Virus record (IMG/VR): IMGVR_UViG_3300042892_005961
Location: 1-64,000 of that record
Length of the DNA stretch: 64,000 nucleotides
Strand: one strand, 5' to 3'
Below are positions 1,547-62,833 of this stretch, piece by piece. The notes under the pieces are model-generated. The model ran no database searches, was not told the DNA's origin, and saw only the letters and a list, made by a program, of their open reading frames with translations. Position 1 is the stretch's first letter; the number at the start of each line of letters is the position of its first letter. Position numbers and translations under genes: made by a program.

Positions 1547-1821
1547 AAATCAATATTAACTAAAAATCTTTCGGTTATGTATCCTGGATTTCTTGGTACC
1601 CAACAAACAACAGAATGATAATTATTTTCTCTTTGTTGAACGTAAAGAACTCTCCAAGTTCCTTGAGTATGTGGGTATTCTTTTGGGAATACTGTTGTTT
1701 CCCATTCATCAGTACTAATTAAACTTTCAAGAATATATTTTGCATTGTCATAACAACAATTAGGACTAAATCTCATTGTTGTTTTTTCATTGTCACTAAA
1801 AAATTTGAACTCACTTACCAT
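1543..1821 (-). CDS. hypothetical protein, N-terminal FKFF motif
   Basis: 92-aa ORF starting MVSEFKFFSDNE; 4-nt overlap with the next gene. Confidence 0.65.
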   Translation of the reverse strand: MVSEFKFFSDNEKTTMRFSPNCCYDNAKYILESLISTDEWETTVFPKEYPHTQGTWRVLYVQQRENNYHSVVCWVPRNPGYITERFLVNIDL

Positions 1822-2258
1822 ATACTTAATATTTTAGCAATTCCAATGATTGTAACGATTGTTGTAAGTGCACTAACAAATACAACACCAATCGGTTCTG
1901 CTCTCCAAGTTTCAATTAAAACCAATTTAACTCTAGTTCCAAATATCTTGACTTTAGTCCATAACGTTGGGTTCAACGTTATGGTTGTTGTTGCTTGAAA
2001 TAATCTAATTCGTTCATCGGTTTCTCTTGAGTGATTTATCATTCCTAATCTTCTTATTCTTTCTTGTTCAATCAACATATCTCTATTTCTCATGTATTGT
2101 TCATGTGATATATTTTGAAAATGTTCAGCATAATATCTTTCCATTTCATTATTGGAATCTAATCTTGGGTAATATAACGATGCTGTCGCATATGTTTCTC
2201 CGTCCATTATATCTAATGTTCCAATATAACCTCTGAAAAAATTGAATTTACTTTTCAT
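1815..2258 (-). CDS. hypothetical membrane protein, N-terminal FNFF motif
   Basis: Starts MKSKFNFFRG; C-terminal hydrophobic helix. Confidence 0.65.
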   Translation of the reverse strand: MKSKFNFFRGYIGTLDIMDGETYATASLYYPRLDSNNEMERYYAEHFQNISHEQYMRNRDMLIEQERIRRLGMINHSRETDERIRLFQATTTITLNPTLWTKVKIFGTRVKLVLIETWRAEPIGVVFVSALTTIVTIIGIAKILSIW

Positions 2259-17173: not shown

Positions 17174-17440
17174 TTAAAACGGCATTTCTTCCCCGTTTTC
17201 GTCATAGTGGATTGGATCAACGTGATTGGCCCTTACTTCCTCACACTCTCTTAGATATTCTTGGTATTCAAGGTCTTCTTCTTTTTTGTAATCAAAGGTT
17301 CTAACAACCCAATCATACCATTCCATTTGATTAAAATGATCGGCTACCTGTTCTAAATCCCATATCTTTTCATACCCCCATTTATGAAGGTACTCTTGTA
17401 GAGTAAGTTTACCTGCAAAAAATTTGAAGTCACTATTCAT
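17174..17440 (-). CDS. hypothetical protein, N-terminal FKFF motif
   Basis: Starts MNSDFKFFAG. Confidence 0.65.
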   Translation of the reverse strand: MNSDFKFFAGKLTLQEYLHKWGYEKIWDLEQVADHFNQMEWYDWVVRTFDYKKEEDLEYQEYLRECEEVRANHVDPIHYDENGEEMPF

Positions 17441-40091: not shown

Positions 40092-40262
40092 ATGGGATGC
40101 GGATGTAAAAAAAACAAGAACACAGAAGTGGTTTCACAACCAACAGAAATTAAGGTTAGTTTAGACGAAGCTCAGATTACTAACCAAACTCCAACGTTGA
40201 CTGAAGAACAACAAAAAACAGTTGACGCGATTGTTGCGAAATTAAATCAACTTAATTCGTAA
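40092..40262 (+). CDS. small protein starting MGCGCK (56 aa)
   Basis: Hand-translated; TATTTAT at 40070-40076. Confidence 0.65.
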   Translation: MGCGCKKNKNTEVVSQPTEIKVSLDEAQITNQTPTLTEEQQKTVDAIVAKLNQLNS

Positions 40263-40352
40263 TATCCTCAACATTAATGATAATCAAAAATATCGTCTTA
40301 ATTGATGATATTTTTTTGGTTATCTAATATATCAATAAATATATATTTGAAT

Positions 40353-40550
40353 ATGAAAGTAGAAAAAAAATTAACGAGTGTCCATGTATTGGAAGACGTT
40401 TACAGAAAATTTAAAATAAATGCAATTGATGGTAATATTAATTTACAAAAGTTAGTTAATCGTACGTTAGATCTTTATGTTAAAGATGATGTGTTTAGAA
40501 ATAAAATAAATAACTACACAGATTTATCTGTGAGTGGATCAAAATATTAA
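40353..40550 (+). CDS. RHH-like small regulator
   Basis: KLTSVHV strand plus NLQKLVNRTLDLY helix; heads the glycosylation operon; TATATTTG just upstream. Confidence 0.6.
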   Translation: MKVEKKLTSVHVLEDVYRKFKINAIDGNINLQKLVNRTLDLYVKDDVFRNKINNYTDLSVSGSKY

Positions 40551-40551
40551 T

Positions 40552-41913
40552 ATGGGTAAACCAAGAATATTATTACTATCAGATGATTTACGAATGACAT
40601 CAGGTATTTCCACAATGTCTAGAGAATTTGTAATGGGTACTTTGGATAGATTTAATTGGGTTCAATTGGGTGCTGGAATTAATCATCATGAAGCTGGTAA
40701 ATTTGTTGACGTTAACGAAGATGCTAGACAAAAGACAGGAGTTAAAGATGCTGAATTAAAAATTATACCATATAATTCATATGGTGATATTGTAATGTTA
40801 AGAAAGATATTATCAGAAATGAAAATAGATGCTATCTTACATTTTACTGATCCCCATTATTGGCAATGGTTATATGACTCCGAACATGAAATAAGACAAC
40901 AAGTCCCAATTTTATATTATCATATATGGGACAATTTACCTGACCCAATGTATAATAAAGATTACTACGAAAGTTGTGATTGGTTAGGATGTATCTCTAA
41001 ATTAACATATGGTATTGTTAATCGTGTTGGTAAAATGGAAGATGAGTTTCGTAAACCATTACAAGATTGGCAAATTAGTTATGTTCCTCATGGAATAAAT
41101 CCAGATACATTTAAACCATTAGAAGATAAAGAATTGATTGATGTTAAAAAGGGTTTATTCGGTGATAAAGAATATGACTTTGTTTTATTTTTTAACAGTA
41201 GAAATATTCGTAGAAAACAACCTTCAGATGTTATTGAATCATTTAAATTATTTTGTGATAAGTTAACCAAAGAACAATCAGACAAATGTGTTTTAGTTAT
41301 GCATACAACTCCGATTGATAACAATGGTACAGATTTATATGCGGTTAGAGATAAAATATGTCCTAATTATGATGTGGTCTTCTCAACCAATAAAATAGAA
41401 AGTGATATTTTAAATAAATTATATAATATCGCCGATTGTACAATTAACATTGCAAATAATGAAGGATTTGGTTTAGGTACCGCCGAAAGTATTATGGCTG
41501 GCACACCCATCATTGTAAGTGTAACAGGTGGTTTACAAGATCAATGTGGTTTTAATTACACTGCAGATGATTACATCAATATTAAAACTTTACACAATAA
41601 ACAAATTCATAAAGATACACCTCACGGTGTGTGGGCTAAACCGATATGGCCTTCCGCAATTAACATTAATGGTTCTCCATTAACACCTTACATTTATGAT
41701 GATAGAGTTAATGATGAAGAAGTTGCTGATGCTATTACTGAAATGTATTTGTTAGGTAAAGAAAAAAGAAAAGAGAATGGTCAAGTGGGAAGAGAGTGGG
41801 CAATCAATAACTTATCGTCAAAAGTTATGTGTGATGCTATGAGTGAAGGAATACAAAAAACAATAAAGAATTTTACACCACGTGAAAGATTTAATTTATA
41901 TAAAGTAGTTTAA
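40552..41913 (+). CDS. GT4 (GT-B) glycosyltransferase
   Basis: VPHGIN, RNIRRKQ, NEGFGLGTAESIMAGTPII. Confidence 0.88.
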   Translation: MGKPRILLLSDDLRMTSGISTMSREFVMGTLDRFNWVQLGAGINHHEAGKFVDVNEDARQKTGVKDAELKIIPYNSYGDIVMLRKILSEMKIDAILHFTDPHYWQWLYDSEHEIRQQVPILYYHIWDNLPDPMYNKDYYESCDWLGCISKLTYGIVNRVGKMEDEFRKPLQDWQISYVPHGINPDTFKPLEDKELIDVKKGLFGDKEYDFVLFFNSRNIRRKQPSDVIESFKLFCDKLTKEQSDKCVLVMHTTPIDNNGTDLYAVRDKICPNYDVVFSTNKIESDILNKLYNIADCTINIANNEGFGLGTAESIMAGTPIIVSVTGGLQDQCGFNYTADDYINIKTLHNKQIHKDTPHGVWAKPIWPSAININGSPLTPYIYDDRVNDEEVADAITEMYLLGKEKRKENGQVGREWAINNLSSKVMCDAMSEGIQKTIKNFTPRERFNLYKVV

Positions 41914-43175
41914 TGAAACCAACAATATTATTTAGAGGACCAGTTAAAACAAGAAGTGGTTATGGTTCACACTCAAGAGATTTATTAGAGGCACTATATC
42001 AAATGAATATATTTGATATTAAAATTGATAGTTGTATGTGGGGGAATACTCCCATGACTGCTTTGGAACCGGATAATACATTTCATAAATGGATTGAAAG
42101 TAATATCGTTTATAAATTTGACGGTCTACCTGATATCTATATACAAGTAACGGTACCTAATGAATTTAAAAGATTTGGTAAATTTAATATAGGTATCACC
42201 GCAGGAATTGAAACAACTGTTGCACCTAAAGATTGGATTGATGGTTGTAATCAAATGGATTTAATAATTACAACATCTAATTTTTCTAAAGATGTTTTAT
42301 TATCTACAGTTTATGATGAAAGAAATAAAACAACAAATGAATTAACTAATCAACATAAGATAACAAAACCAATTGAAGTGTTATTTGAAGGTGTTGATAC
42401 ATCAATCTTTAATGATGTAATCAATAAAGATTTTAAATTAGATATTAAAGAAAACTTCGCATTTTTATTTGTTGGTCATTGGTTAAAGGGAAACATAGGT
42501 CAAGACAGGAAAGACATTGGTATGTTGATTAAATGTTTTGTTGAGGCATTTAAGGATGGTAATGATATGCCGGCGTTGGTATTAAAAACATCATCATCAA
42601 GTTTTTCAATTAAAGAAAGAGAAGTTTTTACTAAAAGAATAAAAGATATTGTTTCTGATATTAAAAATCCTCCGTCAATTTATTTATTATTTGGTGATTT
42701 AAGTAATAAAGAAATGAATGATCTATATAACCATCCAAAAATTAAACTAATGGTTTCACTAACTAAAGGTGAGGGATTTGGTAGACCTTTATTAGAATTT
42801 ACAATGACTGGTAAACCTGTAATGGCTTCCAATTGGTCGGGTCATAAAGATTTTTTATCTGTTGATAAATCAATTATGATTGGTGGTAAATTAACAGATG
42901 TTGACGATAGTGCAATTGATCAGTTTATTATTAAAGGATCTAAATGGTTTACCGCAAATTATGGTGAAGTTGCTGAAATTATGAAAATAGCTAGAAACGA
43001 TTATAGTAATTTCTTACTAAAATCTTTAAAACTTAAAGAAGAGAATAAACAAAACTTTTCTTTAGAAAAAATGAAAGAACGTTTTGAGGAGATATTAAAA
43101 CCATATTCAATTGCGTTTCAACCTCCTCCACAACAAACCAAATTAATTTTACCTAAATTAAATAAAGTTAAATAA
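41913..43175 (+). CDS. GT4 (GT-B) glycosyltransferase
   Basis: SGYGSHSR, DRKDI, GEGFGRPLLEF, WSGHKDF. Confidence 0.88.
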   Translation: MKPTILFRGPVKTRSGYGSHSRDLLEALYQMNIFDIKIDSCMWGNTPMTALEPDNTFHKWIESNIVYKFDGLPDIYIQVTVPNEFKRFGKFNIGITAGIETTVAPKDWIDGCNQMDLIITTSNFSKDVLLSTVYDERNKTTNELTNQHKITKPIEVLFEGVDTSIFNDVINKDFKLDIKENFAFLFVGHWLKGNIGQDRKDIGMLIKCFVEAFKDGNDMPALVLKTSSSSFSIKEREVFTKRIKDIVSDIKNPPSIYLLFGDLSNKEMNDLYNHPKIKLMVSLTKGEGFGRPLLEFTMTGKPVMASNWSGHKDFLSVDKSIMIGGKLTDVDDSAIDQFIIKGSKWFTANYGEVAEIMKIARNDYSNFLLKSLKLKEENKQNFSLEKMKERFEEILKPYSIAFQPPPQQTKLILPKLNKVK

Positions 43176-43405
43176 TGAACTTCAAATTTTTTAAAGGTGA
43201 TGAAACACCTACATTATGTTTTACACCTCATAGATATGAACCAGAAAATGCTGAATTTTGTTTTCAATTTGGTGATGAAGAACCCGTTGTTTTCGCTTCG
43301 GGTCCAAATGATTGTAGTATTCGTTTAAGTCCAACGAGTAATACTGAAATGACGTTTAATGATAATGGTAGAGTATTTAAATTATTCGCAAGAGAAAGAC
43401 AATAA
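43175..43405 (+). CDS. hypothetical protein, N-terminal FKFF motif
   Basis: Starts MNFKFFKG. Confidence 0.65.
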   Translation: MNFKFFKGDETPTLCFTPHRYEPENAEFCFQFGDEEPVVFASGPNDCSIRLSPTSNTEMTFNDNGRVFKLFARERQ

Positions 43406-43406
43406 T

Positions 43407-43649
43407 ATGGGAGTTAGAGAGTTTAGATTTTTTCACGGGATCACAATTCAATCGGAAGGTATTCAAAATATCGTTAGAACACTACGTGCTCAATGGAGAC
43501 CTGAGTTGGTTGATGATTTAAATACTGTTTACTCAATTGATGCTGAGGCAGAATTAACAAGATTAATGTCGGAACAAATTGTGGAAGAAATTGACAACGA
43601 AGTAATAAATATATTAACGGGAAGAATAAACGGAGGACAAAGAGCATAA
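43407..43649 (+). CDS. FRFF-motif miniprotein containing a T4-like major capsid protein fragment
   Basis: MGVREFRFFHG then RTLRAQWRPELVDDLNTVYSIDAEAELTRLMSEQIVEEIDNEVI, recognisably gp23-like. Confidence 0.7.
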   Translation: MGVREFRFFHGITIQSEGIQNIVRTLRAQWRPELVDDLNTVYSIDAEAELTRLMSEQIVEEIDNEVINILTGRINGGQRA

Positions 43650-43650
43650 T

Positions 43651-44271
43651 ATGAAAATAAGTTTTGCAATTACAGTTTGTAATGAATTAGAGGAAATAAA
43701 AAAATTGGTTTCATTTTTATTTAAACATAAAAGAAAGGAAGACGAGATTGTTATTCTCTATGATGAGAAGAACGGCAATCCCGAAATATTAGATTTCTTA
43801 TTACCATATAATAAATTCCCTCACGTTCAAACGTGGAGAGGGTTTGATTTTGAAAGTAACTTTGCAGATTGGAAAAATAAATTAAATGACTACTGTCAGG
43901 GAGATTATATCTATCAAATAGATGCCGATGAAATGGTTAGTGAATATATAGTTAAAAATCTTAATCAAATATTAGAATTAAATCCAAAGGTTGATTTAAT
44001 ATTTGTTCCTCGTATTAATACAGTTAATGGTATAACACAAGAACACATTAATAAATGGGGTTGGAATGTTAATGAAAAAGGATGGGTAAACTTTCCCGAT
44101 GCTCAAGGACGAATATATCGTAAAGGTATGAGTTGGTATGGTAAGGTTCACGAACGAATAATAGGTGGTCAAAAATTTTCATCATTACCTTTAGATGAAG
44201 AATATTGTATACAACACCATAAGACGATTGATCGTCAAGAAAAACAAAACAATTACTATAGTTCATTATGA
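43651..44271 (+). CDS. GT2 glycosyltransferase
   Basis: ISFAITVCNE, NFADWKN, QIDADE, VHE. Confidence 0.88.
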   Translation: MKISFAITVCNELEEIKKLVSFLFKHKRKEDEIVILYDEKNGNPEILDFLLPYNKFPHVQTWRGFDFESNFADWKNKLNDYCQGDYIYQIDADEMVSEYIVKNLNQILELNPKVDLIFVPRINTVNGITQEHINKWGWNVNEKGWVNFPDAQGRIYRKGMSWYGKVHERIIGGQKFSSLPLDEEYCIQHHKTIDRQEKQNNYYSSL

Positions 44272-44882
44272 GTTATCAATACCCAAAACATTTTAAGTAC
44301 CCAGAAGGAGAACGTTATTTCTTTTTAAATCATGTAGATTCATGGAAACATTTCTTACCTAACTATGGTGATGAACCAAGAGTGTGTTTAGAGATAGGTG
44401 CATTGTATGGTGGATCTTCAGTTTATATTTTAGATGAATTCTGTAAAAAAGAAGGTTCACATCATTATATAATGGATATCAATACAAATGAATTTATTGA
44501 AAATAATATTAAACCATATAAAGATAAGGTAACATATATTTTAGGTGAATCGGCCGATAGTTTTAAAACATTTAACCATAATGGTGAAACTAAAGAGTTT
44601 TTAGACTTTGTTTACATAGATGGTAATCATATGTGTAAATATGTTTTAGAAGATGCTGTAAATGCATTTTACTGTTTGAAAGATTATGGTTATATTATCT
44701 TTGATGATTACGGTGGAGGACTTGAACAAGATCAATATTTACAAGTTAAAACTGGTGCTGACGCGTTTTATCATGGATATCACAAATATTTAGAAATAGT
44801 GTATAACGGTTATCAAGTCATTATGAAAAAAATAAATTATATAAATGAAAATGATTTAAAAGAAAATTATTATAAAGTATGA
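44268..44882 (+). CDS. class I SAM methyltransferase (Methyltransf_24-like)
   Basis: LEIGALYGGS, DFVYIDGNH, IIFDDY. Confidence 0.85.
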   Translation: MSYQYPKHFKYPEGERYFFLNHVDSWKHFLPNYGDEPRVCLEIGALYGGSSVYILDEFCKKEGSHHYIMDINTNEFIENNIKPYKDKVTYILGESADSFKTFNHNGETKEFLDFVYIDGNHMCKYVLEDAVNAFYCLKDYGYIIFDDYGGGLEQDQYLQVKTGADAFYHGYHKYLEIVYNGYQVIMKKINYINENDLKENYYKV

Positions 44883-45874
44883 AAATATTAATTACAGGAG
44901 TTGCGGGATTGTTAGGTTCAAGATTATCGGATTACATTATTGAAAATCATTCAGATGTTTATATCGTTGGTATTGATGATATGAGTGGTGGATATAGGGA
45001 GAATGTTAATCCAAAGGTTGAGTTATGGGAAATGAATTTAGTTAATGGTAATATTAGTGAATGTTTTGAAAGACATCAATTTGATTATGTTTACCATTTC
45101 GCAGCATATGCCGCTGAGGGATTATCCCCATTCATTAGAACATATAACTATCAAAACAATTTAGTTGCAACGTCGCGCATTATTACACAATGTATTAAAC
45201 ACAATATTAAAAGATTAGTATTCACGTCTACATTGGCGGTATATGGTCACCAGGATGGTAATATATTTGACGAAATTCAAGTACCTAAGCCTATTGACCC
45301 GTACGGTGTTGCTAAATATGGTTGTGAAATGGATATACAGATTGCTGGTGAGCAACATGGACTTGATTGGTGTATTATTAGACCACACAACGTTTACGGT
45401 GTTAAACAGAACGTATGGGACAAATATAGAAACGTATTAGGTATATGGATGTATCAACATACAATCAACGAACCTATGACAATATTTGGTGACGGTACAC
45501 AAACAAGAGCTTTCAGTTATATTGATGACAGTCTTGAACCATTATGGAAAGCATCTCAAGATATTAGAGCATCAAAAGAAATAATTAACTTAGGTGGTGT
45601 TAAAGAATACTCAATAAACGAAGCTAATGAAATTTTACGTGAAGTAGTTGGTGGAGGTGAGGTAAAATATTTTGAAGGTAGACATGAAGTGAAACACTCA
45701 ATACCTACTTGGCAAAAATCAATTGACTTATTAGACTTTGAACATAAAACAGATTTGAAGGAAGGTTTAACTAAAATGTGGGAGTGGGTTAAAAGTCAAC
45801 CAGTTAGAGAGAGGTTCGTGTGGCCGTTCTACGAATTAGATAAAGGAATTTATTCATTTTGGAAAACAAAGTAA
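44879..45874 (+). CDS. NAD-dependent nucleotide-sugar epimerase/dehydratase
   Basis: ITGVAGLLG, YGVAK, RPHNVYG, GDGTQTRAFSYIDD. Confidence 0.92.
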   Translation: MKILITGVAGLLGSRLSDYIIENHSDVYIVGIDDMSGGYRENVNPKVELWEMNLVNGNISECFERHQFDYVYHFAAYAAEGLSPFIRTYNYQNNLVATSRIITQCIKHNIKRLVFTSTLAVYGHQDGNIFDEIQVPKPIDPYGVAKYGCEMDIQIAGEQHGLDWCIIRPHNVYGVKQNVWDKYRNVLGIWMYQHTINEPMTIFGDGTQTRAFSYIDDSLEPLWKASQDIRASKEIINLGGVKEYSINEANEILREVVGGGEVKYFEGRHEVKHSIPTWQKSIDLLDFEHKTDLKEGLTKMWEWVKSQPVRERFVWPFYELDKGIYSFWKTK

Positions 45875-45875
45875 T

Positions 45876-46898
45876 ATGAAAAAAGTATTAGTATTAGGTG
45901 CTGGTGGATTCATCGGTTCACATTTAGTAAAAAAATTAAAAGAACAAGGATGTTGGGTTAGAGGAGTTGATTTAAAATATCCTGAATATGAAACAAGTGT
46001 TGCAGATGATTTTGTTATTCGTGATTTAAGAGACCCAAGAAATGTTGAGTCTGTGATTAAATTAGAGTCATATAATAATCATCCTTTACCATATAAGTTT
46101 GACCTTTATCCATTCTCAGATAAATTACAATTTGATGAAGTGTATCAATTAGCTGCCGATATGGGTGGAGCTGGTTATATTTTTAGTGGTGATAATGATG
46201 CAAATGTGATGCACAATTCTGCAATGATTAATTTAAATGTTGCATATGAATGTTCAAGACAGGAAGTTAAAAAAGTATTTTATTCTTCTTCCGCTTGTAT
46301 GTATCCAGAACATAATCAATTAGATCCAACTAATCCAAATTGTGAAGAATCTTCAGCCTATCCAGCAAATCCAGATTCAGAATATGGATGGGAAAAATTA
46401 TTTAGTGAAAGAATGTTTTTAGCTTTTCATAGAAATTATAATTTAGATATTAGAATTGCTAGATTTCATAACATATTTGGACCATATGGAACATATAAAG
46501 ATGGAAAAGAAAAGGCACCTGCAGCTATATGTAGAAAAGTTGCTGAGTGTTTAGATGGTGGTGAAATTGAAGTATGGGGAGATGGTGAACAAACTCGTTC
46601 TTTTTTATACATCGATGAATGTATTGAAGGAGTATTAAAATTAATGGAATCAGATTTTATTGGTCCAGTAAATATTGGTAGTGATGAAATGGTAACCATA
46701 AATGATATGGTAAATAGTGTAATCGACATTAGTGGTAAAACGGTACATGTTAAACATGTCGACGGTCCAACTGGTGTTAGAGGTAGAAATAGTGACAATA
46801 CTTTAATTAAAGAAAAATTAAATTGGTCACCAAAACAACCTTTATATGATGGACTAATAAAAACATTTAATTGGATAAACAAAGAAATTATTAAATGA
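45876..46898 (+). CDS. GDP-mannose 3,5-epimerase-like extended SDR
   Basis: GAGGFIG, QLAADMGGAG, YSSSACMYP, YGWEK, KEKAPAAICRK, GVRGRNSDN. Confidence 0.88.
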   Translation: MKKVLVLGAGGFIGSHLVKKLKEQGCWVRGVDLKYPEYETSVADDFVIRDLRDPRNVESVIKLESYNNHPLPYKFDLYPFSDKLQFDEVYQLAADMGGAGYIFSGDNDANVMHNSAMINLNVAYECSRQEVKKVFYSSSACMYPEHNQLDPTNPNCEESSAYPANPDSEYGWEKLFSERMFLAFHRNYNLDIRIARFHNIFGPYGTYKDGKEKAPAAICRKVAECLDGGEIEVWGDGEQTRSFLYIDECIEGVLKLMESDFIGPVNIGSDEMVTINDMVNSVIDISGKTVHVKHVDGPTGVRGRNSDNTLIKEKLNWSPKQPLYDGLIKTFNWINKEIIK

Positions 46899-47470
46899 AA
46901 ATAGAATTTATTATACCGACATACAATAGACCTCATCAATTAATGGGTGTGATAAGTTCTATATATTCACAAACATCACCTAATTGGAAAATACACGTTG
47001 TTGCAGATGCTGTTTATGATGGTTATCAAAAAGTAAAAGATTATTTTAACGGTGACGATAGAATAAGATTTACAGAATTAAATGGTCCACATAAAGATTG
47101 GGGACATACCCCAAGAAATTATGGATTACAACATGCAACGGAAGAATGGGTTGTTATGACAGGTGACGATAATTACTATATGCCAATCTTTGTCGAAGAT
47201 TTTTTAAATTCTGTGGAAAAAAACACACATTTTGTTTATTGTAATATGGTTCACAATTGGGTTAATAATCAATACATTGTTTTAAATTCAATTCCTAAAT
47301 TAGGTGCCATAGACATCGGTAATTTTATGTCTAAAACAGATTTGGCTAAAAATATAAAATTAGATATTACATATGAACAATCTGATGGTTTATTTGTTGA
47401 GGAGTATCTAAGAAAATATCCTCACGGAACTATTAAAAAAATAAATAAACCACTATACGTACATAATTAA
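46895..47470 (+). CDS. GT2 glycosyltransferase
   Basis: IIPTYNR, RNYGL, GDDNYY. Confidence 0.85.
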   Translation: MKIEFIIPTYNRPHQLMGVISSIYSQTSPNWKIHVVADAVYDGYQKVKDYFNGDDRIRFTELNGPHKDWGHTPRNYGLQHATEEWVVMTGDDNYYMPIFVEDFLNSVEKNTHFVYCNMVHNWVNNQYIVLNSIPKLGAIDIGNFMSKTDLAKNIKLDITYEQSDGLFVEEYLRKYPHGTIKKINKPLYVHN

Positions 47471-47473
47471 ATT

Positions 47474-47953
47474 ATGAAACAACAAACAAAACAAGAATTA
47501 GAGGATTGGTATAAAAAAAATGATCCTTGGTCATATAAAACAACTAATGATGATATTATTAGAAAAGAAAAAATATTATCATTATTAGAAAACTATAATA
47601 CGGCATTAGATATTGGTTGCGGTGAAGGATTTATTACGACAGATTTACCCGCAAACAAAATTTACGGAATAGAATTATCTGATAATGCGTCCTTAAGATT
47701 ACCAAATAACATTATTAGATTAATGAAACCAATGGAAAAATATGATTTGGTAATGACAACCGGTACATTATATACTCAATATAATAATGAACAAATAAGA
47801 AATTGGATTTTTGAGTCATCAAAAAAACACATACTGGTTGGTGGAATTAAAGATTGGATGTTGTGGTCCGACTATGGTAAAATAATAAAAGAAATAGAAT
47901 TTAAGTATAGAGAATATACACAAATAATTAGATTATATGAGGTTACTACATAA
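47474..47953 (+). CDS. SAM methyltransferase (NodS-like)
   Basis: DPWSY, ALDIGCGEG, YDLVM..GTLY. Confidence 0.75.
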   Translation: MKQQTKQELEDWYKKNDPWSYKTTNDDIIRKEKILSLLENYNTALDIGCGEGFITTDLPANKIYGIELSDNASLRLPNNIIRLMKPMEKYDLVMTTGTLYTQYNNEQIRNWIFESSKKHILVGGIKDWMLWSDYGKIIKEIEFKYREYTQIIRLYEVTT

Positions 47954-48449
47954 TATAGGAGATATAAGACATTCAAATTATCACACTCGTGATCAAATTT
48001 TAAAATCAAACGAACCATTAGGTTTTGATGGAATATATCTTAATGTTTATGAAAACAAGGATGTGTTAAAAGAGAAGATCGGAATTTTTTTTGTAATGGG
48101 TAATTACATCGGTGGAGACAATTCATTTGATTTAAAATATGTACCGAAGTTAGAAAAATATTGTACATGGGAACAAATACATGAAATGTGTGAAGAGTTT
48201 GATTTTGAAATAGGTTGGCATACTTGGAGTCATCCAGATTTAAGGACATTATCAAAAGAAGAAATAATAAAGGAAATTACTCCCCCATTTCCTATGAGAT
48301 ATTTTGCATATCCATACGGACACTTTAATGATTTAGTTATCGAATGTGTTAAGGAAGTTGGTTTTGAAAAAGCATGGAGTGTTCACCAAGGTTCAAGAAA
48401 TCCAAATGAAAAGGATTATAATTTTAAAATATACAGACCATACTTATGA
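47937..48449 (+). CDS. polysaccharide deacetylase (NodB/CE4-like)
   Basis: GFDG, FFVMG, EIGWHTWSHPDL, FAYPYG. Confidence 0.85.
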   Translation: MRLLHNIGDIRHSNYHTRDQILKSNEPLGFDGIYLNVYENKDVLKEKIGIFFVMGNYIGGDNSFDLKYVPKLEKYCTWEQIHEMCEEFDFEIGWHTWSHPDLRTLSKEEIIKEITPPFPMRYFAYPYGHFNDLVIECVKEVGFEKAWSVHQGSRNPNEKDYNFKIYRPYL

Positions 48450-49180
48450 TTAATTTTGAACAACTTAAGAAAGAATATAACGAAAAAGGTATTATAGTTA
48501 TGTCAAATGTTTTTACGTCAGAAGAGTGTGACGAAATTAAAAAGAATGCTTATTCTGTGAGAGATGAGGATATTAAAAAAAGTGGTTATCCACACGTACC
48601 AAGTGAAAAGAAAAATGGTAAAAGATTGTTAGTTTTTTTTCCGTCACTTGTTAACGAATATCTGAATAAAATTAGAACGGATGAAAGGATGATTAATTTG
48701 GTTAAAAATTTTATTGGTGATGATGTTAAACAAATAAATAATCAAATTTATTTTAGAGAAAGTGGTGACCAAGATCAATTTGCGTGGCATCAAGACGTTA
48801 TGTTTAGAGAGGATATAAATTTCAATAACGATGTAGAGGATGATTATTTCCAAACAATAATTGCCGTTGATGATATAACAGAGGACAATGGTGCAATTGA
48901 ATTTATTGATGGTTCACATAAGACAATGAGGATTCCGATTCCAAATAATTTACGAGAATTTAAAAGAGGTGACTTAAGTGGTAAGAAATATACCGCAAAT
49001 AAAGGTGATGTTTTGATATGGTCAGTTTTATCTGTTCATGGTAGTGAGCCAAATCAATCAAAGAAAGATAGAATGACATATATGAATGGATTCTGTAGGT
49101 CAAAATCAACAAAAACATATCCTGATTACTTGAAAAATGGTGAAATAATTCGTAATATTAATGTAAACCATATACCATGA
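48446..49180 (+). CDS. PhyH-family 2OG-Fe(II) dioxygenase
   Basis: WHQD, NGAIEFIDGSH, GDVLIW, HGSEPN..R. Confidence 0.9.
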   Translation: MINFEQLKKEYNEKGIIVMSNVFTSEECDEIKKNAYSVRDEDIKKSGYPHVPSEKKNGKRLLVFFPSLVNEYLNKIRTDERMINLVKNFIGDDVKQINNQIYFRESGDQDQFAWHQDVMFREDINFNNDVEDDYFQTIIAVDDITEDNGAIEFIDGSHKTMRIPIPNNLREFKRGDLSGKKYTANKGDVLIWSVLSVHGSEPNQSKKDRMTYMNGFCRSKSTKTYPDYLKNGEIIRNINVNHIP

Positions 49181-49791
49181 GTACTATAACAGTTGTGATT
49201 GCTTCATATCAATATGGACATTTAGCCGCACATTGTATTGAAAGTGTTTTATGTCAATCGAGAAAACCTGATAAGATTTTATTTGTAGATGACGGTGTTG
49301 GTGATTGTAGTCACCTACCAAAAATATATCCTGAAGTTGAATATGTGTTGAGGGAAAAAAACATGGGTACTGTTGCAAATTTTCAGGATATGTTGATGAG
49401 AGTGACAACCGATAAATGTATGTTTTTAGGTGCAGATAATTGGTTAAGGGCAGATACTTTAGAAATATTAGACAAAATTGATGCTGATGTTGTTGTTTAT
49501 GATATAGTAGTTACCGGCGATTCAAAAAAAGGTTTACATGATAGACACGGGAATGAAATGACATCATATCAAGGGGATTTATATTGGACTAGATATAAAC
49601 AACATCATGGCTCAATGTTATATAAAACAAAATTAGCACAATCAATTGGTTACAAGGGAACCGGTGGTAAACATTCAGAAGAAGATTTATATCTTTTTAG
49701 AGAAATGAAAAATCGCGGTGCAAAAATGGAATGGGTTAAAGAAGGTCTTTTATATTACAGAAGACATAGAGAAAATTTTATAAAAACATAA
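49177..49791 (+). CDS. GT2 glycosyltransferase
   Basis: VVIASY, VDDG, GADN, EEDL, YYRRH. Confidence 0.85.
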   Translation: MSTITVVIASYQYGHLAAHCIESVLCQSRKPDKILFVDDGVGDCSHLPKIYPEVEYVLREKNMGTVANFQDMLMRVTTDKCMFLGADNWLRADTLEILDKIDADVVVYDIVVTGDSKKGLHDRHGNEMTSYQGDLYWTRYKQHHGSMLYKTKLAQSIGYKGTGGKHSEEDLYLFREMKNRGAKMEWVKEGLLYYRRHRENFIKT

Positions 49792-49792
49792 T

Positions 49793-50905
49793 ATGAAAAT
49801 AAGTTTAGTGCTAGCGGTTTACAATAAATTAGATTTAACAACGGAATGTTACAAAAGATTACGTCAGTTATATCCCAACGCACCATTAGTTATTAGTAGT
49901 GGTGGATCAAGTGATGGAACCAAAGAATGGTTAGAATCATTAGAAGATGAAAACCTATCTTTCTTTCATGATGATGATCGTTTAACATTCTCAGAAACAT
50001 ATAACGCAGGTATTGATCTTGTTGATACGGAAAAAATTGTTCTTATCCATAACGATATGGTTATTGGTGAAGGTTTCTTAGAGGCAATAGAAAGACTATT
50101 AACTGAAAATATGATCTTATCCTACACAACAATTGAACCTCCTATTTTTAAAGGTCATTCAAGACCTGGTAAAGTATTGTTAGATTTGGGTAGTGGGTTT
50201 GATAACTTTGATCAAACTAATTTTAATAATTACATTCAAAAATGGAAAGATACTGATACACTACACGATGGTGCGGTCTTCTTTATGTCAGCATATAAGA
50301 AAACATTTATTGACTTAGGTGGTTTTGATGGATTTAGTTTTGTTCCATGTTTTTGTGAAGATGATGACTTTTTAATCCGTGCGAAACTAAAAGGGTATGA
50401 ATTAAAAACTTGTGATTCTGCAATTACCTATCATTTTGTTTCGCAGACATCAAGGTTCAGTGATGAAATGAAAGATGTACGTGGAACAATTGAAGCTCAT
50501 TCAATTAGAAACTTTATAAGAAAATGGGGGATTAGTATTCCAATGTTTAACGCGATGGATTATCAAACAACAGATAACTTTACATACGTTAAGAAAATTG
50601 TTGGTGTTAAATTAAGTAGTACCAAACATATTGAATTATTGGAACCATTCTTTGATAAGATTGAGATTGATGAGTTCCCAACGGAATATGTTGAAAAGGA
50701 ACAAGGATCTACTCGTTACAATTTAACTAAGAAATTTGAAGATGTTAATGATGTTGATATTAAAGTATTTGTTACCGATAACTTTAATCAGGATGATTTT
50801 AACATGGTCAACGCATTGAGAGTATCTCTTGATGATTACGGACCTGGTGTTTATGAAAATGGTAATATAACAGTGTTGATAATAGATAAGGATCAAAAGG
50901 CATAA
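49793..50905 (+). CDS. GT2 glycosyltransferase
   Basis: GSSDGT, YNAGI, IHNDM, GGFD, EDDDF. Confidence 0.88.
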   Translation: MKISLVLAVYNKLDLTTECYKRLRQLYPNAPLVISSGGSSDGTKEWLESLEDENLSFFHDDDRLTFSETYNAGIDLVDTEKIVLIHNDMVIGEGFLEAIERLLTENMILSYTTIEPPIFKGHSRPGKVLLDLGSGFDNFDQTNFNNYIQKWKDTDTLHDGAVFFMSAYKKTFIDLGGFDGFSFVPCFCEDDDFLIRAKLKGYELKTCDSAITYHFVSQTSRFSDEMKDVRGTIEAHSIRNFIRKWGISIPMFNAMDYQTTDNFTYVKKIVGVKLSSTKHIELLEPFFDKIEIDEFPTEYVEKEQGSTRYNLTKKFEDVNDVDIKVFVTDNFNQDDFNMVNALRVSLDDYGPGVYENGNITVLIIDKDQKA

Positions 50906-53713: not shown

Positions 53714-55843
53714 CTAAATTGGTAGAAGTTTTTCGAGTTTTTCTATAACTTCTCCTCCTGTAATAGTTTTTGAACATTCAAATTGGTTTTCTGTCTTTTC
53801 ATGAATAGGACACCAATTCCAATTACCTGGATCAAATTCATGGTTAGACCAACAACTATTACATACATTTTTATTGATTACCCTTGTTACACCGTCTAAT
53901 GGTTCTAAATCTACGTCAGTAAAACCTGAAATAATTACTGTAGGGGTTCCTGACGCCCAAGATAACCAACTTAATCCACTGCTTATACCTATAAATAATT
54001 CAGACTCTTGTAAAACTTTTATGATATCGGTCAGTTTACCCTTAGGTTGTACCGTAATTCCTTTAGGATGTTTGTTACCCATGTAACCATCTTCCTCACG
54101 AGATAAGAGTCTGACTTCATAATTCTTAGCTTTAAGATAATCTACCACCTCCTGCCAACCGGTTGGATTATTCCAATATTTACATTGAGCTGTTGAATGA
54201 ATAGCAATTGAAACCAATTTTTTCTTCTTCTTACCTAATTTCTTTAATTTAGGTTTAAGTTCCACATAATCCAATCCGAGAATATCGGATGCCACTTTCA
54301 TTAATGGTTCCTTTTTAGGGTCGTTGTAATGTTTTGTATAATCAATTTTACGTTCATTAGTATAAAATAACCCCAAACGATATAACGCGTGTATATTATT
54401 TACGTTTGATCCAGGTAAAACAAACTCAATATCGGGATACTGATCTTTGAATAGATCATTATTGAATGATGAACAAATTACTTTACATTTATTATCTGTT
54501 CTAAATTTCTCAACATATGGTATCCAAGCTAAACTATCTCCTAATGATTTAGATTCAAAACATATCATTACTCTTTTATCCGTTAAATCAAAATTATACT
54601 CTTGGTAGAAATTATTATCAACACCTTTAATTTTAATTAACCAATCTACATAGTATTTTTTAGACGATCTAACCCAATGATTACTCTTTAAATTAAACTC
54701 AAATTCTAATTTACCATTTTTCTTATCTATAAATTGAACGTTGTAAAGATAATCACCTTCTTCTAATACCTCAACAAATGGACCATCAACAAAATGAATG
54801 TTTGTTCTTCTATTTGTGTTAACATTATTTCTTGATAGTTTATTCTTTCTTCTAAACTCATTCATTTCATCTTTAAGTTCCTGTGTGAATATTTCCAATC
54901 CTTGATGACGTACTTCAACTACTTCATTTTGTTTATATTCACCGAGTCTTTCTAATTTGTATTCACCCTTTTTAACTGTATGGAATTTTTTATATGTTCC
55001 ATAGTTAACTTCAATTAAATAATCCTTATCAGCTGGTTGTTCTGAAAATCCGGATATAAAATGAATAAACAATTGTCCCGCATCATCAACACCTAAATAA
55101 GTTTGTAAACGAGCACCATTTTTTAATATACCATTCCTATTCCATACCGCAAACATATTAAGTTCATTATCATTAGGGATATACTTACTAACAAATATAC
55201 TATTGGTAACCTTCTTAATTGATTGGTATAATTGTTTTTCTAATTGCCATCTATCGGGTTTACCCTTGAAGTATTCTTCTTTACTATTAATAAGACTAAT
55301 CATCTTTAACGCAACATCGGTCTTAATTGAAAAGATATAAGCTGAACTATATGGATTACTTTCTTTTGTTGATCCTTCTGAATACTCGTAAACTACGGCA
55401 TCATTACTTCTAATATATTCCATAAATGCTTGACGATACTGAATTTCATCTGGTAAGTTATCATACTCTAAGAAATGAATATATTGTTTACCTAATTGTT
55501 TAACAAGATTGAAAGCATTTTTCATTGTCAACCAAATTGCATAGTCGTGATGAAAATCTATTTTATTAGTTATCTTATACGTTCCCATATCAGTCCATCT
55601 ATCACTATTAATACCATACTCAGCAAAATCCTTTTCTAATAATATGTCGTTATTACCATCATATAGATAGTAATCCGCTAACACTTGTATCTCAGGTGAA
55701 ACTGCATAATGTCCACATAATATAATGGGACAATTATAAACCTTTAAACTTATAAGTAATTTCTTTAAAACATTTTCTTTATCTTTATTATCAGGCCAGC
55801 AGTCAACTACAAAAACATCATCATTAAATTGTGTATATCCCAT
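53714..55843 (-). CDS. TibC/Aah-like (autotransporter O-heptosyltransferase, GT9-related) glycosyltransferase with N-terminal extension
   Basis: SKSLGDSLAWIPY, HSTAQCKYWNNPTGW, FIGISSGLSWLSW, VIISGF, CNSCW...CP...FECSK Cys cluster. Confidence 0.8.
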   Translation of the reverse strand: MGYTQFNDDVFVVDCWPDNKDKENVLKKLLISLKVYNCPIILCGHYAVSPEIQVLADYYLYDGNNDILLEKDFAEYGINSDRWTDMGTYKITNKIDFHHDYAIWLTMKNAFNLVKQLGKQYIHFLEYDNLPDEIQYRQAFMEYIRSNDAVVYEYSEGSTKESNPYSSAYIFSIKTDVALKMISLINSKEEYFKGKPDRWQLEKQLYQSIKKVTNSIFVSKYIPNDNELNMFAVWNRNGILKNGARLQTYLGVDDAGQLFIHFISGFSEQPADKDYLIEVNYGTYKKFHTVKKGEYKLERLGEYKQNEVVEVRHQGLEIFTQELKDEMNEFRRKNKLSRNNVNTNRRTNIHFVDGPFVEVLEEGDYLYNVQFIDKKNGKLEFEFNLKSNHWVRSSKKYYVDWLIKIKGVDNNFYQEYNFDLTDKRVMICFESKSLGDSLAWIPYVEKFRTDNKCKVICSSFNNDLFKDQYPDIEFVLPGSNVNNIHALYRLGLFYTNERKIDYTKHYNDPKKEPLMKVASDILGLDYVELKPKLKKLGKKKKKLVSIAIHSTAQCKYWNNPTGWQEVVDYLKAKNYEVRLLSREEDGYMGNKHPKGITVQPKGKLTDIIKVLQESELFIGISSGLSWLSWASGTPTVIISGFTDVDLEPLDGVTRVINKNVCNSCWSNHEFDPGNWNWCPIHEKTENQFECSKTITGGEVIEKLEKLLPI

Positions 55844-56511
55844 TATCTTTTTCTTATTAAAATTATTCCATTAAGGAAGGTTATTGATTCTATATCAGTT
55901 CTACAATCAGGTTGTACTTTATTTGAATATGGTATTAGTTTATCTTCTCGTCGATCCCATACTGCGGCTTGATCATCTAAGTTCTCAACACCTCTAAAGT
56001 TAATATCATCCGTTAATTTCTTGAAGTATTCCATCATACTCTTAGGGTCATTTAAACCTCCACCGTACCAAGGGAAATAGGATGTTGCAACATCTTCAAC
56101 AATGTACATACCACCCGATTTAACGTATTGAAATAGTGTTTTAAATGAATAAATAACATGTTCATTCAAATGTGATCCGTCATCTAATATAAAATCAAAT
56201 GGACCATATTCATTTGAAATTTGATTTAAAAACTTATCATCATCTTGTGAACCTATTTCAACAAAAATTCTATCTTCCTCATATTTTTTACAATCAGGAT
56301 TGATGTCAATACCTAAAATATTAGAACGATAATAATAATCCTTCCAAGTTAATAGTGATTTACCATCTAAGACACCAATCTCCAATATGTTTAATTTATC
56401 ATATCTGTTAAATGGTAAATACTTTTCATATTTAACACAATAATTGTGATTGTCGGAAGACTTATCAGTTCCGTATACTTTAGCCAAATTATCTAATGTA
56501 CTCATTTCCAA
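55843..56511 (-). CDS. class I SAM methyltransferase (sugar O-methyltransferase-like)
   Basis: YGTDK, LEIGV, GIDI, GSQ, DFILDDGSH, GGMYIVED. Confidence 0.85.
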   Translation of the reverse strand: MEMSTLDNLAKVYGTDKSSDNHNYCVKYEKYLPFNRYDKLNILEIGVLDGKSLLTWKDYYYRSNILGIDINPDCKKYEEDRIFVEIGSQDDDKFLNQISNEYGPFDFILDDGSHLNEHVIYSFKTLFQYVKSGGMYIVEDVATSYFPWYGGGLNDPKSMMEYFKKLTDDINFRGVENLDDQAAVWDRREDKLIPYSNKVQPDCRTDIESITFLNGIILIRKR

Positions 56512-61162: not shown

Positions 61163-61176
61163 TTAAATTAAATAAT

Positions 61177-61764: not shown

Positions 61765-61774
61765 ATTAATTTAA

Positions 61775-62251: not shown

Positions 62252-62257
62252 TATGTA

Positions 62258-62815: not shown

Positions 62816-62833
62816 ATTAATAATATTTTTATA

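What the first reader, a model, noticed from the sequence alone, without database searches (positions are those of the whole stretch)
43407..43649. 80-aa miniprotein carrying an isolated major capsid protein segment
Seen: RTLRAQWRPELVDDLNTVYSIDAEAELTRLMSEQIVEEIDNEVI. From recalled family knowledge this matches the conserved T4-like gp23 segment R.LKA..S.ELAQDL.A.HG.DA.AEL..IL..EI..EI.REV. It occurs as an intact small ORF inside a glycosyltransferase operon, fused to an N-terminal FRFFHG motif, with no other capsid sequence nearby. Inference: a capsid mimic. It could be a decoy for capsid-sensing defences, an assembly modulator or inhibitor of competing phages, or an adaptor bringing glycosylation enzymes to the capsid.
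Basis: partly seen in the sequence, partly recalled or inferred. Interest (0 to 1): 0.78.

Follow-up and report, generated by a model that had tools for sequence, protein, structure and literature searches.

The report
Domesticated capsid-protein fragment in glycosylation cassette
An 80-residue protein of a freshwater jumbo phage is a conserved, selected copy of one short stretch of the T4-type major capsid protein, always encoded inside a glycosyltransferase gene cassette; it is not a decayed gene, and its role (probably a small adaptor) is untested.

Summary
ORF 43407-43649 (+) encodes 80 aa. Residues 11-70 match Pfam Gp23 (E 4.8e-12) and T4 gp23 residues 251-308 (36% identity). This is the P-domain beta-hairpin, the short acidic helix and the spine helix.

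It is not a pseudogene.
- More than 500 intact short homologues exist, down to about 37% identity.
- dN/dS is 0-0.25 for unsaturated pairs.
- No other capsid remnant lies in the 64 kb window.
- The order GT1-GT1-(small beta protein)-mini-GT2 was seen in every diverged lineage looked at, as far as each contig reached.

The N-terminal F-x-F-F-x-G motif is a tag. Four unrelated small ORFs of the window also carry it (5 observed, 0.01 expected).

The mini evolves at two speeds. Tag and hairpin are nearly frozen (omega 0-0.19). The helical part changes fast (up to 0.87) and has lost many residues that capsid proteins never change. That argues against exact mimicry, and so against a decoy.

Best guess (about 0.35): a non-enzymatic adaptor subunit of the glycosylation cassette, possibly giving it capsid specificity.

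Function is unproven, the genome's own capsid gene could not be retrieved, and no description was found in the literature searched. Window = first 64 kb of IMGVR_UViG_3300042892_005961, from lake water.

The parts
43407..43649 (+). Mini-protein CDS (80 aa): an MCP-derived small protein
   Evidence: ORF; Pfam Gp23 E 4.8e-12; 503 short homologues; dN/dS 0-0.25 for unsaturated pairs
43422..43439 (+). N-terminal tag F6-R-F-F-H-G11 (family consensus F-x-F-F-x-G); not derived from the MCP
   Evidence: F8 and G11 invariant, F6 and F9 at least 90% in the family; the same motif starts 4 other ORFs in the window; 5 observed against 0.01 expected; codons differ and upstream DNA is unrelated, so the conservation is at the protein level
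43440..43502 (+). Beta-hairpin I12-P32, including the basic strand R24-T-L-R27-A-x-W30; corresponds to T4 gp23 252-272
   Evidence: BLASTP offset of 240 residues; AF2 strands 13-16 and 23-26; omega 0-0.19 together with the tag
43503..43535 (+). Short acidic helix region E33-S43; corresponds to gp23 273-283
   Evidence: AF2 helix 32-42; in T4 this region holds head-length mutation A275T and the acidic P-domain helix of the intercapsomer contact (PMC9546572)
43536..43616 (+). Spine-helix equivalent I44-L70; corresponds to gp23 284-310
   Evidence: AF2 helix 46-76; profile alignment to gp23 255-311; the fast-evolving part, omega 0.04-0.87
43617..43646 (+). C-terminal tail T71-A80 (consensus T-R-R-I-N-G-G-x-R-A). 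It is colinear with MCP 'LLTQANGAN' and carries the ribosome-binding site of the next gene (GGAGGA at 43632-43637)
   Evidence: The HMM aligns to positions 18-81 of 83 on 640-680 aa MCPs. GGAGGA lies 13 nt before the GT2 ATG at 43651. In other lineages the mini stop overlaps the GT2 start (GCATGA). R79 is coded by AGA, AGG or CGA
43175..43405 (+). 76-aa beta-rich small protein ('s-beta') with the same N-terminal tag (MNFKFFKG); a frequent partner gene of the mini
   Evidence: homologues sit upstream of the mini in L001, L011-L016, L104 (two copies) and L229; no MCP similarity by hhalign (probability 0.07)
40534..41913 (+). GT1-family glycosyltransferase a (the likely true start is ATG 40552)
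   Evidence: Pfam Glycos_transf_1 E 3.2e-10; GT4-conflict E 1.6e-5, just under that family's cut-off
41913..43175 (+). GT1-family glycosyltransferase b, directly upstream of s-beta and the mini
   Evidence: The Pfam Glycos_transf_1 match (23.9 bits) is below the 26.4-bit cut-off; the family assignment rests mainly on 42% identity over its full length to the annotated glycosyltransferase of Flavobacterium phage immuto and to a Microcystis phage Mel-JY01 protein
43651..44271 (+). GT2-family glycosyltransferase; its start lies 1 nt after the mini stop, or overlaps it in relatives (suggesting translational coupling)
   Evidence: Pfam Glycos_transf_2; junction sequences
44268..50905 (+). Rest of the sugar-modification operon: methyltransferase, two NAD epimerases/dehydratases, GT2, methyltransferase-like, polysaccharide deacetylase, PhyH dioxygenase, an unassigned ORF (49177-49791), GT2
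1815..2258 (-). 147-aa ORF with the tag (MKSKFNFFRG) and a C-terminal transmembrane helix
   Evidence: the tag is kept in 11 orthologues down to 35% identity
5237..5605 (-). 122-aa ORF with the tag (MKRFVFFHG) followed by a Thr/Pro/Tyr/Asn/Gly-rich sequence
   Evidence: no Pfam hit
17174..17440 (-). 88-aa acidic ORF with the tag (MNSDFKFFAG), just downstream of the 941-aa helicase gene
   Evidence: no Pfam hit

Best explanation
SHOWN. The gene is a domesticated fragment of a T4-type major capsid protein (MCP). One contiguous stretch of about 65-70 residues is kept: the P-domain beta-hairpin, the short acidic helix, the spine helix and the following turn. It is fused to a clade-specific N-terminal tag, F-x-F-F-x-G. 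The gene is under purifying selection. It is a fixed member of the cassette GT1-GT1-(small beta protein)-mini-GT2 in a clade of AT-rich freshwater jumbo phages. Its stop is 1 nt from, or overlaps, the start of the next gene.

INFERRED. It works as a small non-enzymatic adaptor subunit of that glycosylation cassette.
- The near-invariant tag and hairpin dock onto a conserved partner: the cassette's enzymes or the s-beta protein, or a shared receptor for all tag-bearing proteins.
- The faster-evolving helical part, inherited from the MCP region that in T4 makes capsomer-to-capsomer contacts at the quasi-threefold axes, binds the phage's own capsid protein or capsomer edges.
- The result would be to give the glycan machinery, or a glycan-bearing protein, its capsid address.
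For: Homology to the MCP segment.

Functional rather than decaying:
- 503 intact short homologues at 86-99% identity, plus about 20 cluster representatives at 37-74%.
- Several ESM Atlas clusters of 127-148 members each.
- dN/dS 0-0.25 where dS is unsaturated.

Cassette linkage in six lineages, wholly or in part as far as the contig reached: window/L001, L016, L017, L104, L228 and L229.

Coupling to GT2: a Shine-Dalgarno sequence inside the mini's last codons, or an ATGA overlap.

Tag:
- Shared with s-beta and three other small proteins, 5 observed against 0.01 expected.
- Absent from 1.02 Mb of other AT-rich T4-like loci.
- Conserved in orthologues of the 147-aa protein.

Two-speed evolution: residues 6-32 have omega 0-0.19; residues 33-70 have omega 0.04-0.87.

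In T4 the matching gp23 stretch (PMC9546572, read):
- carries the basic strands and the acidic short helix of the intercapsomer contact;
- carries the head-length mutations A268V, A275T, D285V and D287V/N;
- carries the gp31-bypass sites G292, V306 and V307.
The mini keeps R24, R27, E33 and D45.

The surrounding region is dense in glycan- or protein-modifying genes, including six 2OG-Fe(II) oxygenase paralogues, a carbamoyltransferase and an APS kinase.

Short contigs from two lake metatranscriptome libraries span the s-beta/mini and mini/GT2 junctions. This is weak evidence.
Against: - There is no direct evidence that the mini binds capsid protein, or that the cassette glycosylates the virion.
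- The relatives immuto and Mel-JY01 have the GT1-GT1-GT2 core without any mini. The enzymes therefore do not need it.
- Many MCP-invariant residues are lost. That could mean the capsid-related function was lost and only the fold was reused.
- The AF2 model is of low confidence (pLDDT 58) and structural matches to gp23 are not significant.
- The genome's own MCP was not recovered, so co-variation with it could not be tested.
- Other tag-bearing proteins are not near GT genes.
Confidence: 0.35

Rival explanations
1. Cassette subunit or substrate with no capsid role. Only the hairpin-plus-helix fold was reused. The mini, like s-beta and the Thr-rich 122-aa protein, is marked by the F-x-F-F-x-G tag. 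It is either itself modified (as a carrier or acceptor protein) or it regulates or scaffolds the GT enzymes.
For: - Cassette order seen in every lineage looked at, and coupling to GT2.
- Tag shared with unrelated small proteins, one of them Thr/Pro-rich and thus a plausible O-glycosylation substrate.
- Loss of MCP-invariant residues.
- The tag and hairpin are the most constrained part.
Against: - No conserved Ser/Thr/Asn acceptor site stands out in the family alignment.
- It is unclear why a capsid fragment would be recruited, and why the charged residues R24, R27, E33, D45 and E49 that it shares with MCPs would be kept.
- The tag also occurs on proteins far from any GT gene.
Confidence: 0.25
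2. Capsid-assembly modulator. A free copy of the capsomer-edge elements caps or tunes MCP-MCP contacts near the quasi-threefold axes. It would act as an assembly chaperone, a head-size factor for the enlarged jumbo capsid, or an inhibitor of co-infecting relatives.
For: - The matched gp23 stretch is where T4 head-length (ptg) mutations and the intercapsomer charge pair lie, and it includes chaperonin-bypass sites.
- The basic strand and the acidic helix residues are retained.
- The mini was found in contigs of up to 335 kb but not in the 160-190 kb relatives that share the GT genes.
Against: - The gene is never seen in a head module; it is always inside the sugar operon.
- The interface residues that MCPs keep invariant are relaxed.
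- The correlation with genome size rests on one clade, and many contigs are partial.
Confidence: 0.2
3. Decoy or sponge for a host defence that senses the major capsid protein.
For: - Capsid proteins are common triggers of abortive-infection systems (general knowledge).
- The helical part evolves quickly in some lineages (omega about 0.8), as arms-race proteins do.
- The first GT1 has a weak, sub-threshold match to 'GT4 in conflict systems' (E 1.6e-5).
Against: - The MCP segment itself is almost frozen, while the mini drifts away from it. A decoy should track the sensed surface.
- Fixed placement in a biosynthetic operon, next to GT2, is unlike known anti-defence genes.
- No defence-related neighbours were seen.
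- The known T4 Gol peptide sensed by Lit is, from my memory, a different gp23 region.
Confidence: 0.08
4. Non-functional remnant of a capsid gene, or a chance ORF.
For: It is short, and it covers only 60 of 376 profile positions.
Against: - Hundreds of intact homologues.
- dN/dS well below 1.
- Conserved added tag and conserved gene order across lineages only 37-45% identical.
- No flanking remnants.
Confidence: 0.02

Closest known systems
T4-type major capsid protein gp23 and vertex protein gp24 (Pfam PF07068; PDB 7vs5, 5vf3, 1yue)
   Same: Clear sequence homology over the P-domain hairpin, short helix and spine helix: gp23 251-311, 36% identity to T4, about 50% to aquatic MCPs.
   Different: Only about 65-70 of 520-650 residues are present. 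There is no A domain, insertion domain, N-arm or P-loop. An unrelated N-terminal tag is added. The gene is encoded in a sugar operon. Many MCP-invariant residues are relaxed.
T4 gp67 prohead core protein (80 aa)
   Same: Same size. From my memory it is reported to resemble gp23; the pairwise comparison here found only a non-significant local resemblance to the gp23 N-terminal region (E 0.6). It is a conceptual precedent for a small head protein that echoes part of the MCP.
   Different: No sequence relation to the mini (E 1.0). gp67 lies between the portal and protease genes; the mini does not.
MCP-homologous capsid-size redirecting proteins of phage-inducible islands (e.g. Ccm of SaPIbov5) - from my own knowledge, not tested here
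   Same: A capsid-protein homologue that works as an accessory factor rather than as the shell protein.
   Different: Those are full HK97-fold proteins encoded by satellites. This is a fragment encoded by the phage itself inside a glycosylation cassette.
Phage virion glycosylation cassettes (mycobacteriophage capsid and tail-tube glycosylation, cited in PMC12619734; chlorovirus capsid glycosylation, from my own knowledge)
   Same: Phage-encoded GT clusters that may modify structural proteins. The GT1-GT1-GT2 core is shared with Flavobacterium phage immuto and Microcystis phage Mel-JY01.
   Different: I know of no described cassette that contains a capsid-derived small protein or a shared N-terminal tag. 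The target of this cassette is unknown.

Membership tests
Pfam Gp23 / T4-type major capsid protein | Sequence match above the curated threshold | tested here: met
   46.4 bits against a cut-off of 24.4, E 4.8e-12; PHROG_138
Pfam Gp23 / T4-type major capsid protein | Complete HK97 fold (N-arm, insertion domain or E-loop, P domain, A domain), about 450-680 aa | tested here: not met
   80 aa; only profile positions 135-194 of 376 are matched; the AF2 model has one hairpin and two helices
Pfam Gp23 / T4-type major capsid protein | Encoded in the head module, next to scaffold, protease and portal genes | tested here: not met
   Flanked by glycosyltransferases in all lineages examined. For contrast, immuto, T4 and L227 have the protease-scaffold-MCP order
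T4 gp67-like prohead core protein | Sequence similarity to gp67 | tested here: not met
   BLASTP E 1.0
Pseudogene or decaying gene fragment | Neutral evolution (omega near 1), disrupted frames, sporadic occurrence, flanking remnants of the parent gene | tested here: not met
   omega 0-0.25; 503 intact homologues; conserved synteny; no remnants
Strict molecular mimic or decoy of the MCP surface | Retention of the residues that the MCP itself keeps invariant in the mimicked region | tested here: not met
   K25, A35, Q36, N39, A40, Y41, H42 and others are 95-100% conserved in 44 MCPs but 27-74% in 23 minis; the MCP segment is nearly identical among MCPs that are only about 60% identical overall
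Strict molecular mimic or decoy of the MCP surface | Binding to a host sensor or to an MCP partner | not testable with these tools
   Needs interaction assays or multimer modelling
Accessory subunit of a glycosylation cassette | Constant gene order and close coupling with the enzymes across diverged genomes | tested here: met
   Six lineages, wholly or partly as far as contigs reached; Shine-Dalgarno sequence or ATGA overlap with GT2
Accessory subunit of a glycosylation cassette | Physical or functional dependence of glycosylation on the protein | not testable with these tools
   Relatives with the GT core but no mini exist, so dependence is not universal

The most novel reading that the evidence does not exclude
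The F-x-F-F-x-G tag defines a phage-encoded targeting system. A short leader would mark a set of small proteins (s-beta, the Thr-rich 122-aa protein, the membrane-anchored 147-aa protein, the acidic 88-aa protein and the mini) for a common receptor, such as the phage's large glycan- and protein-modification machinery. The MCP-derived mini would be the piece that plugs modified cargo into the capsid lattice at the capsomer junctions. Together this would be a modular system for decorating a jumbo-phage capsid with glycans, built from a recycled piece of the capsid protein itself.
Probability: 0.12. Interest if true: 0.85.

Novelty: new variant of a known kind. Interest (0 to 1): 0.62.

Why it matters
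Capsid-protein paralogues that took on new roles are known as whole folds: vertex proteins, satellite size-redirecting proteins, encapsulins. Here a fragment of about 65 residues has been kept for a long time as an independent gene. It covers the capsid protein's most conserved stretch, the capsomer-junction and spine-helix region. It has been given a new N-terminal tag and is wired into a sugar-modification operon.

If it binds capsomers, it would be a natural minimal capsid-binding module. It would also be a handle on how large phages decorate or tune their shells.

The recurrent tag points to an unrecognised short linear motif system in an abundant, uncultured group of lake phages.

Tried and rejected
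1. T4 gp67 as a homologue (a lead from memory): no similarity.
2. The upstream 76-aa ORF as a further MCP piece, such as the insertion domain: hhalign probability 0.07; only a sub-threshold PKD hit.
3. The tag as a DNA-level element (a promoter or recombination site): upstream sequences are unrelated and codons vary.
4. The T4 late promoter TATAAATA: not enriched (21 observed, 22 expected).
5. P0128, a 1130-aa hit with 7 matched stretches, is a TPR-repeat protein with chance resemblance.
6. The slot between GT1b and GT2 in phage immuto holds an unrelated Zn-ribbon protein; Mel-JY01 has nothing there.
7. The genome's own MCP was not recovered.
   - Tried: the listing of cluster members, alignment-based locus search, two protein searches read by longest contig, an AT-biased DNA pattern, exact look-up of a candidate MCP, a single-protein locus search.
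   - They did show that a similar MCP type sits on AT-rich jumbo contigs of 354-369 kb, and on a 296-297 kb pair with 40% GC at the one locus measured.
8. Which MCP lineage donated the fragment: HMM scores of 62-79 bits for all aquatic groups do not discriminate. The 640-680 aa group aligns furthest into the C-terminal tail.
9. Structure: AF2 pLDDT is 58 for the mini and 65 for s-beta. The Foldseek top hits are T4 gp23/gp24 chains, but at E 0.36 or worse.
10. RNA evidence: only two short metatranscriptome contigs, and DNA carry-over is not excluded.
11. Two exact look-ups were wasted on mis-set minus-strand coordinates.
12. An alignment-based search for more minis failed for lack of a conserved 7-10 column block.

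Full report
OBSERVATION. The ORF is real: ATG at 43407, TAA at 43647-43649, 80 codons. A longer 96-codon reading from 43359 overlaps the upstream gene in another frame. Homologues start at the position of M1 (M-x-R-E-F-K-F-F), so 43407 is the start. Residues 11-70 match Pfam Gp23 (E 4.8e-12, 46.4 bits, cut-off 24.4, profile positions 135-194 of 376) and PHROG_138 'major head protein'. BLASTP against T4 gp23, taken from NC_000866, aligns residues 11-68 with gp23 251-308 at 36% identity, E 5e-11. A profile of the family hits the solved T4 gp23 chains at residues 255-311 (E 1e-10) and gp24 (E 0.002).

WHAT THE WINDOW IS. Tail-fibre, helicase, endolysin-like and many glycosyltransferase ORFs, with most ORFs lacking any PHROG match, indicate a novel large tailed phage. 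Coordinates returned for two other window genes show that the window is the first 64 kb of IMGVR_UViG_3300042892_005961 (211,168 bp). Near-identical minis sit on contigs of 334,492 and 335,630 bp. GC is 30%. The sequence is held by many lake-water metagenomes. It is not in the INPHARED phage collection. The nearest cultured phages are Flavobacterium phage immuto (160 kb) and Microcystis phage Mel-JY01 (190 kb). They share the second GT1 enzyme at 42% identity over its full length. Their capsid proteins are also the best cultured-phage matches to the mini.

NOT A REMNANT.
- A length-restricted search found 503 short homologues. The 120 listed are 80-110 aa and 86-99% identical.
- The exhaustive search of 50%-identity representatives added about 20 further complete minis at 37-74% identity, besides truncated capsid proteins.
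- The ESM Atlas holds several clusters of 127-148 members of 69-89 aa labelled Gp23-domain proteins.
- Pairwise dN/dS is 0-0.25 where dS is unsaturated (0.06-0.7). It stays below 0.65 at saturation.
- tblastn of eight full-length capsid proteins against the window finds only 43440-43625 (E about 1e-13) and nothing else below E 1.
- There is a single copy per locus.

ANATOMY. The family alignment (A1) and a residue-by-residue comparison with 44 diverse capsid proteins give four parts.
- Part (i), the tag: M-x(1-4)-F-x-F-F-x-G. F8 and G11 are invariant and F6 and F9 are at least 90% conserved. It has no counterpart in capsid proteins.
- Part (ii), the hairpin: a loop of variable length, ending in R-T-L-R-A-x-W-x-P-E.
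- Part (iii), the helices: a short helix and a long helix (AF2: strands 13-16 and 23-26, helices 32-42 and 46-76; pLDDT only 58).
- Part (iv), the tail: T-R-R-I-N-G-G-x-R-A. The family HMM aligns colinearly with capsid proteins from position 18 to 81 of 83, with 'LTRRINGGN' facing MCP 'LLTQANGAN'. Everything except the tag and the last two residues is therefore one contiguous piece of a capsid protein.
- The tail also has a nucleotide-level role. The codons for G76-G77 read GGAGGA (43632-43637), 13 nt before the GT2 start. In other lineages the mini's stop overlaps that start (GCATGA), which puts the GGAGG 8 nt upstream. R79 is nevertheless coded by AGA, AGG or CGA, so it is also kept at the protein level.

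WHAT THE MATCHING CAPSID STRETCH DOES IN T4. According to Fang et al. 2022 (PMC9546572, read):
- Neighbouring capsomers are held near the quasi-threefold axes by charge contacts between a short acidic P-domain helix and basic P-domain strands. These contacts stay fixed during expansion.
- The head-length mutations A268V, A275T, D285V and D287V/N lie next to that helix.
- The chaperonin-bypass substitutions G292S, V306I and V307I lie in the spine helix.
With the offset of 240, all seven positions fall inside the mini. The mini keeps the basic strand residues R24 and R27 and the acidic E33, D37, D45 and E49.

HOW IT EVOLVES.
- The capsid segment is almost frozen. Capsid proteins only about 60% identical overall share a virtually identical 'KTRKLKAVWTPELAQDLNAYHSIDAEAELTALLSEYVSMEIDLEILDML'.
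- The minis are relaxed at K25, A35, Q36, N39, A40, Y41, H42 and other positions.
- They share with capsid proteins only R24, A28, W30, E33, D45, E49, L50 and L54.
- Within the window's sub-clade, residues 6-32 have omega 0-0.19 and are nearly unchanged despite dS of 0.26-1.05. Residues 33-70 have omega 0.04-0.87.
- In the window-L015 pair the two halves have omega 0.04 and 0.77, with dS in the same range (0.38 and 0.64, below the 0.74-0.82 of the flanking genes). The jump is therefore in amino-acid change, not an import from a distant donor.
- At depth the mini diverges faster than its enzyme neighbours: 36-39% against 58-71% identity.

CONTEXT.
- The order GT1 (about 455 aa), GT1 (about 420 aa), zero to two copies of a 76-86 aa beta-rich protein, mini, GT2 (about 205 aa) recurs in all lineages examined, wholly or in part as far as the contig reached. 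These are window/L001, L016, L017, L104, L228 and L229.
- Downstream follow a methyltransferase, two epimerases/dehydratases, GT2, a deacetylase, a PhyH dioxygenase and another GT2.
- On the opposite strand at the window's end and beyond lie a 911-aa GT1-methyltransferase fusion, a GT9 protein, six 2OG-Fe(II) oxygenase paralogues, a carbamoyltransferase and an APS kinase.
- Immuto and Mel-JY01 have the GT1-GT1-GT2 core without a mini. Immuto has an unrelated Zn-ribbon protein in the slot.
- The beta protein is not capsid-derived.

THE TAG. Five ORFs of the window start with M-x(1-4)-F-x-F-F-x-G:
- the 76-aa beta protein (43175, +);
- the mini (43407, +);
- an 88-aa acidic protein (17440, -);
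- a 122-aa Thr/Pro-rich protein (5605, -);
- a 147-aa protein with a C-terminal membrane helix (2258, -).
Two hundred second-order Markov simulations give a mean of 0.01 and a maximum of 1. 1.02 Mb of other AT-rich T4-like loci give two doubtful non-ATG matches. About 500 kb of other MCP loci give one, and 66 kb of immuto gives none that starts an annotated gene. Eleven orthologues of the 147-aa protein, down to 35% identity, keep the tag. I found no known motif that explains it.

INTERPRETATION.
- Settled: this is a domesticated, selected capsid-protein fragment that belongs to a glycosylation cassette.
- Inferred: its mechanism. The near-frozen tag and hairpin suggest a conserved docking partner. 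The helical half, inherited from the capsomer-junction region, is the plausible capsid-binding end and changes faster, as expected if it tracks a lineage-specific surface.
- I therefore favour a non-enzymatic adaptor that gives the cassette a capsid address (about 0.35).
- Rivals: a cassette subunit or substrate with no capsid role (0.25); an assembly or size modulator (0.20); a defence decoy (0.08, weakened by the loss of MCP-invariant residues); a remnant (0.02).

LITERATURE. Full-text searches for capsid decoys or mimics, truncated capsid proteins, PF07068, and freshwater jumbo phages with glycosyltransferases found no description of such a protein. A 2025 paper on freshwater 'moraphages' reports four core glycosyltransferase families and Bacteroidota hosts. 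It does not mention Gp23-like small proteins. Whether this window belongs to that lineage is unknown.

LIMITS.
- The phage's own capsid gene was not retrieved despite seven attempts.
- Structure models are of low confidence.
- Expression evidence is two short metatranscriptome contigs.
- No interaction could be modelled with the tools at hand.

Noticed in passing
window 1815-2258(-), 5237-5605(-), 17174-17440(-), 43175-43405(+), 43407-43649(+): Five unrelated small ORFs begin with the same motif M-x(1-4)-F-x-F-F-x-G (5 observed, 0.01 expected). Its function is unknown. It is conserved in orthologues of the 147-aa protein down to 35% identity.
   Followed up: partly
window 17174-17440(-): The 88-aa tag-bearing acidic protein, encoded just downstream of the 941-aa helicase, ends in ...NGEEMPF. 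From memory this resembles the acidic C-terminal tail of bacterial SSB (DDDIPF), so it may be an SSB-tail mimic.
   Followed up: no
window 59269-63795(-) and L102:1-10000: A run of six paralogous 2OG-Fe(II) oxygenase (prolyl-hydroxylase-like) genes lies here. Beyond the window's end are a carbamoyltransferase, an APS kinase, a GDSL lipase-like gene and DUF5672. This is an unusually large modification gene set for a phage.
   Followed up: partly
window 53714-59237(-): A 911-aa fusion of a GT1 glycosyltransferase with a methyltransferase, followed by a 709-aa Glyco_transf_9 (heptosyltransferase-like) protein.
   Followed up: no
proteins P0134, P0204, P0246; context of P0204: A second kind of short Gp23-like protein (164-211 aa). 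It has one or two copies of the same capsid segment, repeated 'TR-x-VLFEK' motifs, and a C-terminal 'FP-x-VNR-x-FS' that resembles the MCP N-arm motif FPIVRRVF. It is not in a GT cassette. This suggests that capsid-fragment domestication happened more than once.
   Followed up: partly
L015:10001-10234 against window 43413-43646: Inside the mini gene, the first 90 nt are 91-93% identical and the rest 60-71%, while the flanking genes are 82-85% identical. dS is in the same range in both halves, so amino-acid change accelerated in the helical half of this lineage.
   Followed up: yes
L171 / L227:1-857: The T4-type portal gene of an AT-rich lake phage (1006 aa) carries an intein with a LAGLIDADG endonuclease domain.
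   Followed up: no
window 40092-40550(+): The operon is preceded by two conserved small ORFs. One is 56 aa and starts MGCGCKK. The other is about 65 aa and, by eye, looks like a ribbon-helix-helix regulator (MKVEKKLTSVHVLEDVYRKFK...). Both are also present in L001 and L017.
   Followed up: no
L106:40295-42237 (phage immuto): The cultured relative immuto encodes its own GroES and GroEL. This is relevant because the matching gp23 stretch contains chaperonin-bypass sites in T4.
   Followed up: no
window 43632-43651: The conserved C-terminal Gly-Gly of the mini is encoded by GGAGGA, which serves as the Shine-Dalgarno sequence of the downstream GT2. In several relatives the mini stop and the GT2 start overlap (GCATGA).
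   Followed up: yes
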